64,000 nt of DNA from Mytilus edulis (taxonomy: Eukaryota). This document shows positions 1 through 19,158 of this stretch, one piece after another (within the stretch, counting starts at the first letter, position 1; each line of letters begins with the position of its first letter). The notes under the pieces were generated by a model that saw only the letters and a list, made by a program, of their open reading frames with translations, searched no databases and was not told the origin of the DNA. The position numbers and the translations under genes were made by a program. Location of the stretch: assembly GCF_963676685.1 (NCBI RefSeq), contig NC_092352.1, forward strand, positions 44,144,001 to 44,208,000, in the 5' to 3' direction.

Positions 1-1
1 T

Positions 2-1527
2 ATCAAACATAAACTAAAAGAACTAGCCAAGGAATTTGTTTTTGTCCCGGCAGATAAAGCTGCTAATAATATTATTATTGTTTGACGTAAATTTTACATT
101 GAGGTTCTGAAAAAGGAAATCACCAATTCACCAACATTCCAACTGACTCTATTTTCAGAAAACGAAATCTGTAACAAACATAAACTTTTAGCCACTGCTT
201 TACAAGCAGAGCCAAATACAATGAAAGTCCCAACTATGTATTGGCTTCCGAAGCTACACAAAACCCCTTACAAATATAGATTTATTTCGTCTTCAAGCCA
301 TTGTTCAACTACTAAATTGTCTATTCTTCTTACCAGCACACTTGGTACAATTAAAAACCTGATAATAAATTGTTCAAATAAGGCCTTCGAAAATAGTGGA
401 ATAAATTACTTTTGGAGTGTCAAGAACTCGTTGGAAGTACTTGATAAATTGCATGCTTATATTGGTGATTTTGAATCTGTTCAAAGTTTTGATTTTTCTA
501 CCCTGTATACCACATTGCCTCACATTCTCATTAAGAAAAAATTCACACACCTAATTAAATGGGCATTCAAAAAATCAGAATGTGAATATATATGTTCAAA
601 CTCTTTTGGGTCATTTTTTAGTAGCAATAACAAAAAAACTATGTTAATTGGACATGCTTTGATACTATATATGCCCTTGAATTTTTACTAGATAACATTT
701 TTGTTCGCTTTGGGGATTCCGTATATCGTCAGATTATCGGAATTCCAATGGGGACTAACTGTGCACCACTTATTGCGGACCTGTTTTTGTATTGTTATGA
801 GTTACAATTTATGACAAAAATAAGCAAAGACCCATCGAAACAACATCTGATAAACAAATTTAATAATACTTTTAGATATTTGGATGATATTTTGGCTCTC
901 AATAATGACGACTTCAGTATGTATATTAATGAAATTTTTCCTGTTGAACTTACTTTAAATAAAGCTCATACTAACAATGACCACTGCCCTTTTCTCGATC
1001 TTGATATCTATATCGCTAATGGAAAGCTGAATACTAAAATTTATGATAAAAGGGATGATTTTTCATTTCCTATCGTTAATTATCCGTTTTTAGATGGTGA
1101 CGTTCCCTTGTCACCATCTTACGGTGTTTATATATCTCAACTTGTACGATTCGCTCGTGTATGTAACACTGTTTTAGATTTTAACGAGAGAAATTTATGT
1201 ATTACTGAAAAATTATTACACCAGGGTTTTCGATATCACAAACTAGTCAAAACATTTACTAAATTTTATCATCGGTATAAAGACATCATTCGTAAATATA
1301 GCTCAACATGCAGACTTCTAATACGTTCAGGTATTTCACATCCAATTTTTTATGGTAATATTCTTTATAAAGCACAAAGGTGTCAGTATTCACCTCAGAA
1401 ACTTAAAAAACCTTTGAATAGACTTATTAAGAAGGGATATAATTACGATACTGTTGTCAAGTCATTAAAGATTGCATATTTTGGCGTTAATATTGAGTCA
1501 CTGATAAGGTCTTTGCATCGGAACTAA
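2..1527 (+). CDS. PLE reverse transcriptase, 5'-partial; in-frame TGA at 83-85 (putative Sec); 1-nt frameshift at about 629
   Basis: Frame 2 reads IKHKLKELAKEFVFVPADKAANNIIIV*RKFYIEVLKKE straight into ORF 221-691. From 631, frame 1 reads QKNYVNWTCFDTIYALEFLLDNIFVRFGDSVYRQIIGIP into ORF 748-1527. Confidence 0.85.
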
Positions 1528-1574
1528 ACACATTTATTCTAAAAACAGTTGTTGGCATGACACGGGTTATGTTC

Positions 1575-1647
1575 TTTTCATATATGTTATGATGGTATGA
1601 TACTAAACCCCTAACGGGAAGGATTGTGCCTGATGTTCATATGATGA
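1575..1647 (+). promoter_or_regulatory. SECIS element (type II) in the PLE 3' UTR
   Basis: ATGA 1589-1592, 12 nt, AAA 1605-1607, apical ministem CCC/GGG, TGAT 1631-1634. Upper stem GGTATGAT/ATTGTGCC; lower stem CATAT/ATATG. Confidence 0.8.
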
Positions 1648-2031
1648 AATCATAATCTTTCAGTCAGTTTAATTGAAGTCTGGAGCTGGCATGTCAGTTA
1701 ACTGCTAGTAGTCTGTTGTTATTTATGTATTATTGTCATTTTGTTTATTTTCTTTGGTTACATCTTCTGACATCAGACTCGGATTTCTCTTGAACTGAAT
1801 TTTAATGTGCGTTTTGTTATGCGTTTACTTTACTACATTGGTTAGAGGTATAGGGGGAGGGTTGAGATCTCACAAACATGTTTAACCCCGCCGCATTTAT
1901 GCGCCTGTCCCAAGTCAGGAGCCTCTGGCCTTTGTTAGTCTTGTATTATTTTAATTTTAGTTTCTTGTGTACAATTTGGAAATTAGTATGGCGTTCATTA
2001 TCACTGGACTAGTATATATTTGTTTATGGGC

Positions 2032-2100
2032 CAGCTGAGGGACGCCTCCGGGTGCGGGAATTTCTCGCTACATTGAAGACCTGTTGGTGACCCTCTGCTG
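2032..2100 (+). ncRNA. Putative four-way-junction RNA motif in the PLE 3' region
   Basis: Closing stem CAGCTGAGGG/CCCTCTGCTG encloses three hairpins, one with a C(UCCG)G tetraloop. Covaries with the copy at 17026-17094. Confidence 0.55.
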
Positions 2101-2504
2101 TTGTTTTTTATTTGGTCGGGTTGTTGTCTCTTTGACACATTCCCCATTTCCATTCTCAATTTTATATAAAATATAAACATCAACTGGACGTTATTGATAG
2201 ATATATGCTCGGTATATCTGTTTGGGAATCTTGATGTTCAAGTACTCTGGCACTGGGTGACTTTTGGTTTTGGCAATAATGTTGCAACTTATAGCGTATA
2301 AATTTATCTAAATCTTGATTATTTTACTATGATTTAGAGATAAAATTAATACATGTACTAGTAAACAAATTTTAGAATAAAAGTTTAAGTCCGAATGGCG
2401 TTCAAGAGATGCAGTCTGATGATTAAAAAAATTAAGAACTTACAAATTGCATTTTAAAAAAACACATCAACATAAAATGTGATTGGAATGAATTCTGTAA
2501 CAAT

Positions 2505-2805
2505 GGGATATCACCAGCTCAGTAGTCATCATTTTTGTGTTGACGTGACTTATCATTAATATAGCCACATCATTCATGTCATTATGAATTAATTGGTTCA
2601 CAATACTTTAAATTTTCGAAATACAAAGGATGTTCGACCTAGCAATAGATGACATTAACTGAATTTTGCAACAACAAAAACGCAACTTTGGGTCCTCAAT
2701 GGTCTTCTTTTTTTTTTTACTTTTTTTATTCGAGAATCACTAATGAGTCTTTTGTAGATGAAACGTACAAAATGGTAATAATCGTATCAAAGATAATTTT
2801 ATTTA
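2505..2805 (+). mobile_element. Degenerate hammerhead/retrozyme-type repeat
   Basis: Same body as 14142-14376 (GGTCCTCAATG...). Core decayed: CTAATGAGTCTTTTGTAGATGAAACG. Confidence 0.6.
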
Positions 2806-2913
2806 CAATTCAACCAATTTTAAAATAAGCATAAAAAGAAAAAGAATAACGATGTTTTTATAACTACCATCATCATAACAGATAATTGTATTTTTATTAT
2901 TTTCATCTTGAAG

Positions 2914-4020
2914 CCGCGGAAAAACAGAAAGACCAGACATGGAGATGGTGGAGAAACAGGGGCTAGTGATATGATGTTAGAAACTCTAGAAAATCAGGTG
3001 TCTGAGACTAAAGATATAATGTCAACAAATATTATAAAGATGCACGAGAGGGAGGGTAAATTAGAGGATCTGGAATCTAGAGCTGGAATTCTGGCGGAAC
3101 AGACGGTAAATTATAAATTATAAATTTGATCCTTTAAAGCTTTAATTTCACTCTTCTTCATGGTTTCAGTTAGATAAACACTACTATAAGTAGAAGCAAA
3201 TGAATTCGGATCAAAAAGAAAATATGTTGATAGGTCGGGACAATAGCAACGCAATTAGTCTAAAAGTGGGGTAACTATCAAAAAAGAACAACTGCACATT
3301 TTCTGATCTCTCGTCCATGATGTTAATATCTTTTTTCAACGGGTTGCAATTGTTTATTCACCATGTTACTAAAAATACCCGTATAAGCTTTAACAGACAT
3401 CGGTACACGCTTTTGAATTTCGAGGCAAGGGTTTGGCTTTATAAATATTTTGATATGAGCGTCACTGATGAGTCTTATGTAGACGAAACGCGCGTCTGGC
3501 GTACTAAATTATAATCCTGGTACCTTTAATAACTATTAAGTTGAAGAAACAAATGTCTGCTATACTCAAAAAAAAATTATTGATCTTTCAATGAAGTTCT
3601 GTTGACGTTATGTAATTTTTAAAACTTATATACATAGCCACTGTAATTGTTTACTAACTTAGTGTGTTTAATAAAATATTAAGATATTACATAATTTGTT
3701 CTCACCCAACTCTCAATGTTTGTAGCATTATAACATCTGCCGATTAATCCCAATACTTGGTGTTGGTTTTTATTAGATTATTTGAAATGTTTGTTTTTGC
3801 TTTGAATATGATAATTTTTCAATTGAAAAAACTTTTTTTATTTTTATCTATTTTTTTGCAGACTGCCGAATTTAAAAAGCTTGCAGTAAAAACTCGACAG
3901 AAAGCTAAAAAGAAGTCTAAAAGAATGACTTATATTTTCGTCGGCGTTATAGTAATTGCAGTAGCACTTATAATCTTAATACTTGTTTTGTATGGAACTG
4001 GTGCTTTAGGTGACAGCTAA
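2914..4020 (+). CDS. VAMP/synaptobrevin-like R-SNARE (exons 2914-3105 and 3862-4020; first exon or start not located)
   Basis: LENQVSETKDIMSTNIIKMHEREGKLEDLESRAGIL resembles the synaptobrevin motif with a zero-layer Arg. Phase-0 GT-AG intron 3106-3861. Basic linker and C-terminal TM helix IFVGVIVIAVALIILILVLY. TAA at 4018-4020. Confidence 0.8.
3460..3501 (+). ncRNA. Type I hammerhead ribozyme (intact core)
   Basis: Stem I CGTCA/TGGCG; CTGATGA; stem II GTC/GAC; GAAA; palindromic stem III ACGCGCGT; GUC cleavage triplet ending at 3496. Confidence 0.88.
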
Positions 4021-11720: not shown

Positions 11721-12075
11721 AAAGGTGAAACCAATATTTACAGGCGAGATAGTTGTTATTATTTCTAAAACGGTAGGAAATCTTTGTCCCGTTAAGTTGT
11801 TGTTAAAATATAAACAATCAGCTAATATTGACTGATTGCAGCAAAAATTTCCACTTTCATATACAAGGGCACGATCGATTTTGCTTGAAGCTCATGAATC
11901 TTTAGGATTAGATCAGAGTAAATTTGGTTTACATAGTAAATGAAGTGTTGCTGCTTCTAGTGCAGCAAATTTGGTTTTTCAGTGAGATTACTTAAAACTC
12001 GTAGTTGTTTGGCATCTGATGGGTCTAAATATAGTTACATTAAAGATAATATACAATCACAAATGGCAGTTTCAA
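11721..12075 (+). pseudogene. Tyrosine recombinase relic of a DIRS/Ngaro-type retrotransposon
   Basis: Broken translation: KGETNIYRR..VIISKTVGNLCPVKLLLKY..PLSYTRARSILLEAHESLGLDQSKFGLHSK*SVAASSAANL..SERLLKT..ASDGSKYSYIKD, matching the YR FGLHSLRSGGA..HGRW..Y pattern. Confidence 0.75.
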
Positions 12076-13138
12076 TCTTCGTAAAATTGATAATTGGGAA
12101 GTTGAAATTGTCCCGTTTGTCAAAGATATTAGTGTGTAGTCGTCCATTTGCGTAAATATTGACGAAAAGGTTAAGGTATAATGTATAAAGCTGACTGAAA
12201 CACAATTATACAGTGATTGGACATCATCAATACATCTGAAAGTGAAATTTAAAAATTCCAGAAAGTGCTTTTCCTCTTTGTCTTGTAGAAGGGTTCTGAA
12301 TGAATTTTGTTTATTACGTGTACAAAAACAAATCGGTTAGTGAGCACAATTAGTTCCCATTTGAATACCGATTGTCTTTTAAAATATCAATCCTCAAAAC
12401 TCAACAAATATATTTTCGATCAGAGTCTAGCATTTTGTCAAATTTATTTATGATTACCTTTATTTAAAACTTTGTTTAATGAGATAGTGAAGCCGATTAT
12501 TTAATTGACCATAAGAAAAAATAGTGTAAAACGTAGTAAAATCGAAAGTTTAATTTCGTGAAGTTTTGGTATCTAGTATAATAACGGTATATTTTGATCA
12601 CTTTCTTTAACATGTTTAATGTTAATACAAATAAAAGAAGGACCGATCCTTTATAATTCAAAATGAGGGTAAAGAATATGCATGGTTTCCAGTTTTGCTG
12701 TAAATCCTTTTGTGAGTAATCGTGTTACATATGAAGACTAATCTGCTTGAACAACGACATATAGTTGTCGTGCAAAGAGGATAAAGTATCTTCATCTTCC
12801 TGATTCTTGAATACATAGATGGGTTATCTGGTATATCAATTAAAAAAAGGAGAATTTTCATAAATCAAAGGATAACTTACAAACAATTTGCAGCATATAA
12901 TTATACTTATCCATAATTCTGATATGACGTGTTTCAGTCGCTTTGTAAACAACACTGTGATAAAATTCTCGATATATCTATACTTAGCACAGACTCATAG
13001 ATATTCATAATAATGGTTGTTACAATATACTTCCCACGTCAATCTACATGAATTAGAACCTATTTGCAGACTCTTTGCCGATTTTATTGATTTAAAAAGT
13101 GCAATTAAAAAAAGACAAAATAACTGTTATTCGTATTC

Positions 13139-14141: not shown

Positions 14142-14376
14142 TTTCAAAATTTTGAATATTTGAAATACTAAGGCTTTTCTACCTCCGGCATAGATAACCT
14201 TAGCTGTATTTGACAAAACTTTTAGAAATTTTGGTCCTCAATGCTTTTCAACTTCGTACTTTATTTGGCCTTTTTAACTTTTTTGGATTCGAGCGTCACT
14301 GATGAGTCTTTTGTAGACGAAACGCGCGTCTGGCGTATATACAAAATTTAGTCCTGGTATCTATAATGAGTTTATT
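14142..14376 (+). mobile_element. Retrozyme-like repeat carrying a hammerhead ribozyme
   Basis: Body shared with copies at about 2505, 19260 and 26100. Confidence 0.75.
14294..14335 (+). ncRNA. Type I hammerhead ribozyme (intact core)
   Basis: CGTCA-CTGATGA-GTCttttgtaGAC-GAA-ACGCGCGT-C-TGGCG. Confidence 0.88.
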
Positions 14377-17620: not shown

Positions 17621-17869
17621 AAAATGTATAAGTCAGCTCTTATTTTTTAGATGAATTATCATTGATATATGGTCATTAGTACAAATTAACTGTTTACAAA
17701 ACTGATTTTTTCGAGAGAAAAAAAAAAAACAGTTGAAGGCTGTTCTACCTTAGTTGTATGTTGCTAAACCACTCGGAATTAATAATCTACAACTTTATAC
17801 TTTAGTTGACATCTTAACTTTATATAGATGAATCGTATAAAATTGTAATTCTAGTATCCATGATGAGTT

Positions 17870-19158
17870 GATTTACAGTATAAAGAAAGATAAGAAGTTA
17901 GCAATATCCTTTAACTTTACGTTCCGCTATATAGATGATGTTCCCTCACTAAATAATACAAAATTTGGCGACTATGTTGAACGAATCTATATCATCGAAC
18001 TAAAGATAAAGGAGACTACAGATATAGCTCATATATTGACTTACATCTAATAATTGACAATGAGGGTCGATTGAATACAAAACTTTACGACAAAAGAGAT
18101 GATTTCAGCTTCCCAATTGAGAAATTTACATTTCTATGTAGTATCATTTCAGCAGCACCTGCATATGGAGTATATATCTTCCAAATGATACATTATTCCC
18201 GTGCTTGTATTTCCTATCAGGAAGTACAACACTAATTCATGGTCCCATTGCTTGCTATGTTAAATTCCTCCGTTTTAAGCAAGCACGCCTCTTTTGTTTT
18301 AAGTTCCAATAAAGTGGCAATCATTGCATGTCAAAGCAATACTTTATGGTGTTCTGTACCTAAAAAATCAACAAACCTTTAATGTCATATAAGAAAGAAC
18401 TGGTTCCCGGAACTTCGGATGTACCAAAACAGGTACTTCAGATCTGACTAACAGACAAAATGTACCCTCTTTTTTAAAATTTGGTGCAGTTTTTTTTATA
18501 TTCAAATTAAAAGACCAAAAGTGTTCTACAATGATCACCAGTCTTTCAGCTTTCATTTAATACAAAAAAAACTAAATATTCTACGTATTTTGAAAGTCAC
18601 ACTCATGCGTAGGAACTATTTTGTGTTAAATATGTACTACTTTCTGGTATGTGCTTTCTGGCCGGGCCCGAATTAGTGGTTTTACACCATCATGATTTCC
18701 TTGATATAGGATGCTACTCAAAAGGATGCTATTGAACCAAGAGTTGATGAAATTGAAATCATCCCTTCCTAAATTTTACGGACGCCATTACGAGTTGGGT
18801 GACCGTCATGGAATTACCGTTTCAAAGATGATATCAGATATGTTCCTTGTGTCGTAACTACAAAACCCTTCCCTTTTCACGAATGTGACCTACCGAATAA
18901 GACTATTAACCGGATTTGTAATAACATAAGCAACACGACTGGTGCACATGTGGAGCAGGATCTGCTTACCCTTCCGGAGCACCTGAGATCACCCCAAGTT
19001 TTTAGTGGGGTTTGTGTTGCTTAGTCTTTAGTTTTCTATGTTGTGTCTTCTGTACTTTTATTTGTCTGTTTGTCTTTTTACTTTAAGCCATGGCATTTTC
19101 AGTGTATTTTGTATCTATGAGTGTGACTCTCCCTCTGTTATCTTTCGTCCCTCTTTTA
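17870..19158 (+). pseudogene. Decayed 5'-truncated PLE (second family): RT C-terminus plus 3' UTR
   Basis: FNFTFRYIDDV, RLNTKLYDKRDDFSFPI, PAYGVYI; after an insertion, LKSSLPKFYGRHYEL. Contains frameshifts and stops. Confidence 0.8.
18220..18688. mobile_element. Non-autonomous DNA transposon nested in the PLE
   Basis: Imperfect TIRs GGAAGTACAACACTAATTC / GAATTAGTGGTTTTACACC. ATCA duplicated on both flanks; removing the element rejoins the RT. Confidence 0.7.

What the first reader, a model, noticed from the sequence alone, without database searches (positions are those of the whole stretch)
2..1647. Retrotransposon apparently encoding a selenocysteine reverse transcriptase (in-frame UGA plus its own SECIS)
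Seen: the only stop in the N-terminal RT frame is TGA at 83-85, in VPADKAANNIIIV*RKFY. About 60 nt after the true TAA lies ATGA-N12-AA-N25-GA with a paired upper stem and CCC/GGG apical ministem. Known: this position is usually Cys (NN..VCK..Y) in related PLE RTs; the 3' fold matches a type II eukaryotic SECIS; Sec-encoding Naiad PLEs have been reported in spiders and clams. Inference: the element hijacks host Sec machinery, so full-length EN-RT is made only on UGA recoding, which could tie transposition to selenium supply. If the host is a mussel this may be a further, possibly independent, occurrence; I cannot confirm novelty. This copy also has a 1-nt frameshift at about 629.
Basis: partly seen in the sequence, partly recalled or inferred. 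Interest (0 to 1): 0.9.

Follow-up and report, generated by a model that had tools for sequence, protein, structure and literature searches.

The report
Selenocysteine-coding Naiad retrotransposon, dead mussel copy
This is a broken, front-truncated copy of a very abundant mussel jumping gene (a Naiad Penelope-like element) whose intact copies need four UGA codons read as selenocysteine, helped by their own SECIS hairpin, to make their endonuclease-reverse transcriptase; such elements were described in clams and spiders in 2021, so mussels are a new host, not a new principle.

Summary
TGA at 83-85 is the only stop in the frame, TAA is at 1525-1527, and a SECIS-like hairpin lies at 1579-1643. 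Rfam SECIS_1 scores it 32.3 bits, just under the cut-off of 35, and it is the only such hit in the 64 kb. A 1-nt deletion sits at 628/629.

The window copy starts 488 bp before the window and ends at 2164. It is dead: it begins at about codon 331 and is frameshifted. Full-length copies (about 3.9 kb) have a 1002-codon ORF with four in-frame TGAs and a TAA stop. The TGAs sit at the second Cys of the CX4CxxC finger, the Cys before GIY, the first CCHH Cys, and DKA+8.

- All copies checked keep TGA (11-13 for the first three sites, 30 for the fourth).
- Public relatives overwhelmingly have Cys there.
- Two subfamilies 8% apart share all four TGAs, with dN/dS 0.11 in every segment, including two Met-less stretches between TGAs.
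- The host has tRNA-Sec genes.

So this is a selection-maintained Sec-encoding Naiad. It matches Craig et al. 2021 (clams, spiders) and adds mussels.

Sec insertion itself is inferred, not shown. Other agents of this scan reached the same reading on other copies in this genome.

The parts
1..2164 (+). 3' 2.65 kb of a 5'-truncated Naiad PLE copy. The copy begins 488 bp before window base 1, at about ORF codon 331, and lacks the endonuclease part with the first three UGAs.
   Evidence: blastn to a full-length copy: positions 1237-3890 match L001:1011-3663. The 3' end ...TTCTCAATTTTA| is sharp and shared by 49 copy ends with unrelated flanks.
2..82 (+). ORF codons 495-521, ending in the DKA motif region (FVFVPADKAANNIIIV)
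83..85 (+). In-frame TGA (ORF codon 522, the fourth putative Sec codon), 8 aa after DKA
   Evidence: TGA in 30/30 independent copies. Of the first 100 of 1409 genome matches, 99 are TGA and 1 is TGG. Cys in 88 public relatives.
86..1524 (+). Reverse-transcriptase part of the ORF (480 codons in unbroken copies), here broken by a frameshift
   Evidence: 3231 public homologues at E<=0.001. Full-length relatives carry N-terminal GIY-YIG plus a sub-threshold RVT_1 match.
628..629 (+). Site of a 1-nt deletion (A-run, codon 704) that shifts the frame in this copy only
   Evidence: Pairwise alignment to a full-length copy. Other copies are 1700 nt against 1699 nt over the same span.
1525..1527 (+). 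True stop codon TAA
   Evidence: TAA in 31/31 copies.
1579..1643 (+). SECIS-like hairpin in the 3'UTR, with a ministem (type II form): AUGA 1589-1592, AAA 1605-1607, ministem 1609-1611/1616-1618, GA 1632-1633
   Evidence: Rfam SECIS_1 32.3 bits, gathering score 35. The same hairpin scores 41.4 bits in a copy where one A>C change closes an A.G mismatch, and 30.9 bits in subfamily B. The core motifs are unchanged between subfamilies.
1528..2164 (+). 3'UTR and tail of the element

Best explanation
The window holds a dead copy (5'-truncated, one frameshift) of a young, high-copy Naiad-type Penelope-like retrotransposon of a mussel-like genome. The full-length element is about 3.9 kb and has one ORF of 1002 codons: an N-terminal GIY-YIG endonuclease, a KR-rich/CxC/GxKY linker, and a reverse transcriptase. 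The ORF is interrupted only by four UGA codons, at codons 55, 86, 97 and 522, each at a conserved cysteine. Inferred mechanism: the SECIS hairpin about 50 nt after the TAA recruits the host Sec machinery (SBP2, eEFSec, Sec-tRNA). The four UGAs are then read as selenocysteine and the full-length EN-RT is made. Without recoding, translation would end after 54 residues. Shown here: the anatomy, fixation of TGA in all copies examined, Cys in homologues, purifying selection across all inter-UGA segments, a SECIS-like fold, and host tRNA-Sec genes. Inferred only: that Sec is the residue inserted, and how efficiently.
For: - **Stops.** All four internal stops are TGA and the terminal stop is TAA.
- **Fixation.** TGA in 11/11, 12/12, 13/13 and 30/30 copies at the four sites. 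130/130 best endonuclease-region matches carry TGAs: 3 in nearly all, 2 or 4 in three of them. 73/74 RT-region matches carry at least one.
- **Positions.** The sites match conserved Cys in relatives: 36, 48, 57 and 88 C. They also match the sites published for Sec-Naiads.
- **Selection.** Subfamilies A and B are 91.7% identical and both have unbroken 1002-codon ORFs with the same four TGAs. dN/dS is 0.107 overall, and 0.068, 0.055, 0.114 and 0.106 in the four segments. The p-value is 8e-51 overall and 4e-6 for the part upstream of the third UGA. That part includes two Met-less stretches that cannot be made by re-initiation.
- **SECIS.** It is the only SECIS_1 hit in the window, on the sense strand, in the 3'UTR. 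One copy variant scores 41.4 bits, above the cut-off.
- **Host.** Five tRNA-Sec genes score above the Rfam cut-off.
- **RNA.** RNA-seq reads cover the whole element.
Against: - The majority SECIS scores 32.3 bits, below Rfam's gathering score of 35.
- The SECIS is no better conserved between subfamilies (60/65) than the rest of the 3'UTR (90%). One A/B change turns the first helix II pair G-C into A.C.
- RNA reads lie on both strands in similar numbers, so they do not show the element's own transcript.
- There is no protein-level evidence.
- Pfam finds nothing in the ORF pieces themselves.
Confidence: 0.87

Rival explanations
1. The UGAs are read through, but not as Sec. Near-cognate tRNAs (Cys, Trp, Arg) or another recoding signal would insert the residue, and the SECIS-like hairpin would be incidental.
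For: The SECIS score is just under the Rfam cut-off. The hairpin is no better conserved than the neighbouring UTR.
Against: Four successive low-efficiency read-throughs would give almost no full-length protein. All four sites are Cys positions, for which Sec is the natural replacement. The hairpin has AUGA, AAA and GA at canonical spacing and is the only such hit in 128 kb searched. The same design is published for Naiads.
Confidence: 0.06
2. The UGAs are real stops. The family would be non-autonomous and copied in trans by another Naiad's protein.
For: Most copies are truncated, which is typical of PLEs. No protein evidence exists.
Against: dN/dS is about 0.1 in all segments between two subfamilies that both carry the four TGAs. 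No TAA or TAG occurs in 1002 codons of unbroken copies. The stops fall only at Cys codons. No Cys-type sister family closer than about 80% was found in this genome.
Confidence: 0.04
3. A-to-I editing turns UGA into UGG (Trp) in the transcript.
For: A few public relatives show W at these columns.
Against: Trp cannot replace metal-binding Cys. No A>G change at the four codons is among the 40 best-supported differences shown, but 308 rows were hidden. The W residues more likely reflect TGA translated under code 4; this could not be verified.
Confidence: 0.01

Closest known systems
Selenoprotein-encoding Naiad PLEs of clams (Naiad_Mmer, Naiad_Scon) and Stegodyphus spiders (Naiad_Smim, Naiad_Sdum); Craig, Yushenova, Rodriguez & Arkhipova 2021, PMC8557442
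   Same: - N-terminal GIY-YIG endonuclease plus C-terminal RT, with multiple in-frame UGAs at conserved Cys.
- UGA at the Cys before GIY-YIG and at DKA+8, as in all four published families.
- UGA at the first CCHH Cys, as in the clams.
- UGA at the second Cys of the CX2-5CxxC finger, as in Naiad_Sdum.
- SECIS in the 3'UTR, and very high copy number in a bivalve.
   Different: - The host is a mussel-like genome, which is not among the four published Sec families.
- The combination of four sites is its own.
- The hairpin has a ministem (type II form in the Rfam alignment), whereas the paper reports type I.
- It starts 51 nt after the stop, rather than 1-21 nt after or overlapping it.
- No phylogeny against the published families was possible because the supplement is not held.
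Cys-type Naiad PLEs (public relatives P0002-P0004 at 76-80% identity; full-length P0128, P0148)
   Same: Collinear ORF with the same motifs: CxC, GPKYR, PADKAANN, and the RT core. P0128 and P0148 have Pfam GIY-YIG at the N-terminus.
   Different: They have Cys where this family has UGA.
Selenoprotein P of bivalves (processive multi-UGA recoding; Baclaocos et al. 2019, as cited in PMC8557442)
   Same: Several UGAs in one ORF are decoded with a 3'UTR SECIS in a host known for processive Sec insertion.
   Different: It is a host gene, not a mobile element. I took this from the paper's discussion and did not test it here.

Membership tests
Naiad clade of Penelope-like elements | GIY-YIG endonuclease placed N-terminal to the RT in one ORF | tested here: met
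   IIY...YVGETGR core at codons about 91-111, upstream of the RT. It is collinear with relatives whose N-termini hit Pfam GIY-YIG above the cut-off. Pfam is silent on the UGA-split pieces themselves.
Naiad clade of Penelope-like elements | CX2-5CxxC and CCHH Zn-finger-like motifs in the endonuclease | tested here: met
   C-HAKK-U-LT-C and U-NKPG-C ... H/H, with UGA replacing one Cys of each motif. Relatives have Cys there.
Naiad clade of Penelope-like elements | KR-rich block, CxC motif and GxKF/Y motif between EN and RT; DKG modified to DKA | tested here: met
   RKKRSHGSRTNRNQRKFR; SCNCSNSEY; KGPKYR; VPADKAANN, against the motif list.
Naiad clade of Penelope-like elements | 3.4-4.4 kb body, frequent 5' truncation, partial tandems (pLTR) | tested here: met
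   The body is 3890 bp, 5' ends vary and the 3' end is sharp. Tandem copies lie about 4.03 kb apart. There are 7837 SECIS cores against 1409 sites of the fourth UGA.
Naiad clade of Penelope-like elements | No canonical hammerhead ribozyme inside the element | tested here: met
   No Hammerhead hit falls inside any full-length copy; the hits lie in the flanks only.
Naiad clade of Penelope-like elements | Insertion bias for (TA)n or other microsatellites | tested here: inconclusive
   The 3' flanks are AT-rich and often start with T or TA, but are not clear microsatellites.
Naiad clade of Penelope-like elements | IFD insertion between RT3(A) and RT4(B) | not tested
   No reference alignment was available.
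Eukaryotic selenoprotein gene | In-frame UGA aligned with Cys (or Sec) in homologues | tested here: met
   Four of four sites.
Eukaryotic selenoprotein gene | SECIS element in the 3'UTR | tested here: inconclusive
   There is a full-length SECIS_1 alignment with the AUGA/AAA/GA core. The majority form scores 32.3 bits, below the gathering score of 35. One copy variant scores 41.4 and subfamily B scores 30.9. SECISearch3 was not available.
Eukaryotic selenoprotein gene | Coding constraint continues downstream of the UGA | tested here: met
   dN/dS is 0.06-0.11 in each segment.
Eukaryotic selenoprotein gene | Host has the Sec machinery | tested here: met
   Five tRNA-Sec genes at 77-79.6 bits against a gathering score of 47. 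SBP2 and eEFSec were not searched.
Eukaryotic selenoprotein gene | Sec shown in the protein | not testable with these tools
   Needs 75Se labelling, mass spectrometry or Ribo-seq.

The most novel reading that the evidence does not exclude
Sec-coding Naiads may not be four odd families but a large, old and still active branch. The evidence has four parts. First, this mussel family (two subfamilies under purifying selection) has scattered about 7,800 SECIS hairpins through the genome. Second, dozens of public relatives at 37-75% identity have ORFs that end or restart exactly at the DKA+8 codon. Third, some relatives show W, possibly TGA translated under code 4, at further Cys columns such as the first Cys of CxC. 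Fourth, the ministem (type II) SECIS, unlike the published type I, would fit a separate SECIS history in mussels. The dispersed hairpins could also seed new host selenoproteins or compete for SBP2.
Probability: 0.35. Interest if true: 0.65.

Novelty: new member of a known kind. Interest (0 to 1): 0.5.

Why it matters
Selenoprotein-coding transposons are known from only four families in one paper. A selection-maintained family of thousands of copies in mussels shows that the strategy is neither a curiosity nor a decayed state.

- It warns annotators that 'stop-ridden' Naiad ORFs in bivalves can be intact.
- It gives an abundant natural system for studying multi-UGA recoding.
- About 7,800 SECIS-like hairpins are spread through the genome, which is raw material for new selenoprotein genes.
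- Any dependence of transposition on selenium status is testable but has not been shown.

Tried and rejected
- **Pfam on the four ORF pieces:** no family. The GIY-YIG core is split by UGAs, so I used full-length Cys-type relatives instead.
- **Whole-genome RF00031 search:** only 130 of about 47,000 candidates were scored. The one hit was a copy of this same family, so the search gives no background rate.
I therefore could not see the organisms, 3'UTRs or codons behind the public relatives, including whether W stands for TGA.
- **Cys-type sister family in this genome:** none found. The best matches to P0003 are this family at 80%.
- **The paper's supplement** (Naiad protein sequences) is not held, so there is no phylogeny and no test of 'independent origin'.
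- **SECIS covariation:** the five A/B differences include two G.U-to-A-U changes but no true double compensatory change, so I claim no covariation support.
- **RNA reads:** both strands are covered about equally and depth rises towards the 3' end. This fits many truncated copies inside other transcripts or DNA carry-over, and is not proof of the element's own mRNA.

Full report
**1. Observation**

Frame 2 of the window reads ...KEFVFVPADKAANNIIIV*RKFYIEVL. The stop is TGA at 83-85, and there is no other stop until the frame breaks near 629. The continuation in the +1 frame runs to TAA at 1525-1527.

Rfam's SECIS_1 model aligns over its full length at 1579-1643 on the same strand. The score is 32.3 bits against a gathering score of 35, with E=0.0011 for 4 kb. 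The parts of the hairpin are:
- AUGA at 1589-1592
- 12 nt to the AAA at 1605-1607
- a CCC/GGG ministem at 1609-1611/1616-1618
- the 3' GA at 1632-1633

A scan of the whole 64-kb window on both strands gives no other SECIS hit at E<=0.05. The MFE fold is -20.1 kcal/mol, z=-2.05.

**2. What the copy is**

The window is G000:C9:44144001-44208000 in a 1.37-Gb assembly. Its repeat copies sit on 14 large contigs. Earlier notes of this scan call the genome Mytilus; I did not verify the species.

The stretch 2-1700 has at least 2858 first-look matches in this genome, and the best 40 are 96-100% identical. All copies share a sharp 3' end at window 2164 (...TTCTCAATTTTA|) with unrelated flanks, and their 5' ends vary.

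Full-length copies are about 3890 bp. Some sit in head-to-tail tandems about 4.03 kb apart.

The window copy starts 488 bp before the window, at about ORF codon 331. It has a 1-nt deletion in an A-run at 628/629 (codon 704) and 29 substitutions against one full-length copy. It is therefore a dead copy.

**3. The full ORF**

In full-length copies the ORF has 1002 codons. It is interrupted by exactly four stops, all TGA, at codons 55, 86, 97 and 522, and it ends in TAA. The contexts are:

| Codon | Context | Position |
|---|---|---|
| 55 | SIDKC-HAKK-U-LT-C | second Cys of the CX4CxxC finger |
| 86 | ETDIT-U-RTNSIIY | Cys before GIY |
| 97 | YLLT-U-NKPGCGIQYVGETGR | first Cys of the CCHH finger |
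| 522 | PADKAANNIIIV-U-RKFY | 8 aa after DKA |

The linker carries the Naiad diagnostic motifs listed in the paper: a KR-rich block, SCNCSNSEY (CxC) and KGPKYR (GxKF/Y).

Pfam finds nothing in the UGA-separated pieces. Full-length Cys-type relatives have Pfam GIY-YIG above the cut-off at the N-terminus and a sub-threshold RVT_1 match further on. No hammerhead ribozyme lies inside the element.

**4. Are the TGAs fixed?**

In independent copies the four sites are TGA in 11/11, 12/12, 13/13 and 30/30, and the stop is TAA in 31/31.

A 35-nt pattern around the fourth site finds 1409 places in the genome, against 0 for the control. Of the first 100 listed, 99 have TGA and 1 has TGG.

All 130 best matches to an endonuclease-region relative carry TGAs, three in nearly all of them. 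73 of 74 RT-region matches carry at least one.

**5. Homologues**

The RT piece has 3231 public homologues at E<=0.001. The middle piece has 2758 in the representative library.

| Site | Residues aligned in relatives |
|---|---|
| first UGA (codon 55) | C in 36, other in 3 |
| second UGA (codon 86) | C in 48, W in 1, other in 5, gap in 1 |
| third UGA (codon 97) | C in 57, W in 1 |
| fourth UGA (codon 522) | C in 88, W in 6, S in 1 |

In addition, 7 ORFs end exactly before the fourth site and 46 start within 12 aa after it. The length window of the search favours such fragments, so that count is biased.

The closest Cys-type relatives (P0002-P0004, 76-80% identity) read NNIIIVCRKYY. That family is not in this genome.

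**6. Selection**

A second subfamily (B) is 91.7% identical in DNA. It also has an unbroken 1002-codon ORF with the same four TGAs.

Nei-Gojobori counts between one A copy and one B copy give 150 synonymous and 73 non-synonymous changes. dS is 0.29, dN is 0.031 and dN/dS is 0.107 (p=8e-51).

| Segment | dN/dS |
|---|---|
| Met to first UGA | 0.068 |
| first to third UGA | 0.055 |
| third to fourth UGA | 0.114 |
| fourth UGA to stop | 0.106 |

For the part upstream of the third UGA, p=4e-6. The 30- and 10-codon stretches between the first three UGAs contain no Met, so they can only be translated by reading through.

This is the strongest evidence here that the whole ORF is made as one protein while carrying the UGAs.

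**7. SECIS across copies**

Of 41 copies, 26 have the majority hairpin and 7 have the B form. The rest are single changes.

One copy has an A>C change that closes the A.G mismatch in helix II. It scores 41.4 bits, above the cut-off. Subfamily B scores 30.9 bits.

The five A/B differences spare AUGA, AAA and GA:
- two turn G.U into A-U;
- one opens the first pair of helix II (G-C to A.C);
- one opens the top of helix I;
- one is unpaired.

The hairpin (60/65 identical) is no better conserved than the 3'UTR as a whole (90%). It is therefore compatible with function but gives no covariation proof.

A 40-nt SECIS core pattern occurs 7837 times in the genome, against 0 for the control. That is 5.6 times the number of fourth-UGA sites and reflects 5' truncation.

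**8. Host and expression**

Five tRNA-Sec genes score 77-79.6 bits against a gathering score of 47.

Three raw-read RNA-seq runs and one metatranscriptome cover all 30 bins of a full-length copy. Depth rises from about 5-90 over the ORF to several hundred at the 3' end. Both orientations are about equally represented, so the reads do not prove the element's own transcript.

None of the four TGAs is among the 40 best-supported differences shown, but 308 rows were hidden.

**9. Comparison with what is known**

Craig et al. 2021 (PMC8557442) described Naiads and reported four Sec-encoding families. Two are in clams and two are in Stegodyphus spiders.
- All four have UGA at the Cys before GIY-YIG and at DKA+8.
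- Clams add the first CCHH Cys.
- Spiders add CX2-5CxxC cysteines.
- All four have grade-A type I SECIS elements, 1-21 nt after the stop in three families and overlapping it in Naiad_Mmer.

The mussel element has the three clam sites plus one finger site. Its ministem (type II form) SECIS starts 51 nt after the stop.

The paper lists mussel Naiads but not as Sec families. No later paper in the held library reports them. The novelty class is therefore a new member of a known kind.

Whether the transition was independent of the clams could not be tested, because the supplement is not held.

**10. Earlier notes of this scan**

Sixteen notes in this genome describe the same family on other pieces. 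Three follow-up agents reached the same reading. I tested the claims myself, and they agree with my results.

**11. Limits**

Noticed in passing
window 3459-3502 (+) and 14293-14336 (+); also L039:2372-2415(-), L039:2672-2715(+), L056:5407-5450(-): Type I hammerhead ribozyme motifs (29-34.5 bits, gathering score 34) sit in a roughly 105-nt dispersed repeat (window 3431-3537). The repeat recurs in many fetched loci, several times close to Naiad copies but outside them. It may be retrozyme-like or the pLTR of another PLE.
   Followed up: partly
window 17841-18208 (+) and 12046-12423 (-): Diverged PLE-like RT fragments, 31-52% identical to this element's RT, presumably remnants of other families.
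   Followed up: no
G000:C7:74815896-75374462 and C1:49149863; C10:14401393-14442259: Four equally scoring tRNA-Sec genes lie within 560 kb on C7, and one more lies on C1. Separately, C10 carries a tandem array of about 895-bp units, each with a sub-threshold tRNA-Sec-like hit (45.9 bits, probably another tRNA).
   Followed up: no
public proteins P0162, P0108, P0104, P0079, P0087, P0090, P0092, P0127 and others: W appears at conserved Cys columns: the second and third UGA sites in P0162, DKA+8 in six proteins, and the first Cys of CxC in twelve. This may be TGA translated under code 4, which would mean more Sec-Naiad lineages and further Sec positions. The DNA could not be fetched.
   Followed up: partly
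junctions of tandem copies, e.g. L053:4863-4936, L033:3201-3274: The same roughly 74-nt sequence (TTTTTTACAGAGTTTG...) follows the 3' end whenever another copy comes next. It is either a 5' extension of the unit or the 'tail' described for PLEs.
   Followed up: no
whole genome: There are about 7,837 copies of the SECIS core against about 1,409 copies of the fourth UGA site. That is a very large pool of orphan SECIS-like hairpins.
   Followed up: partly
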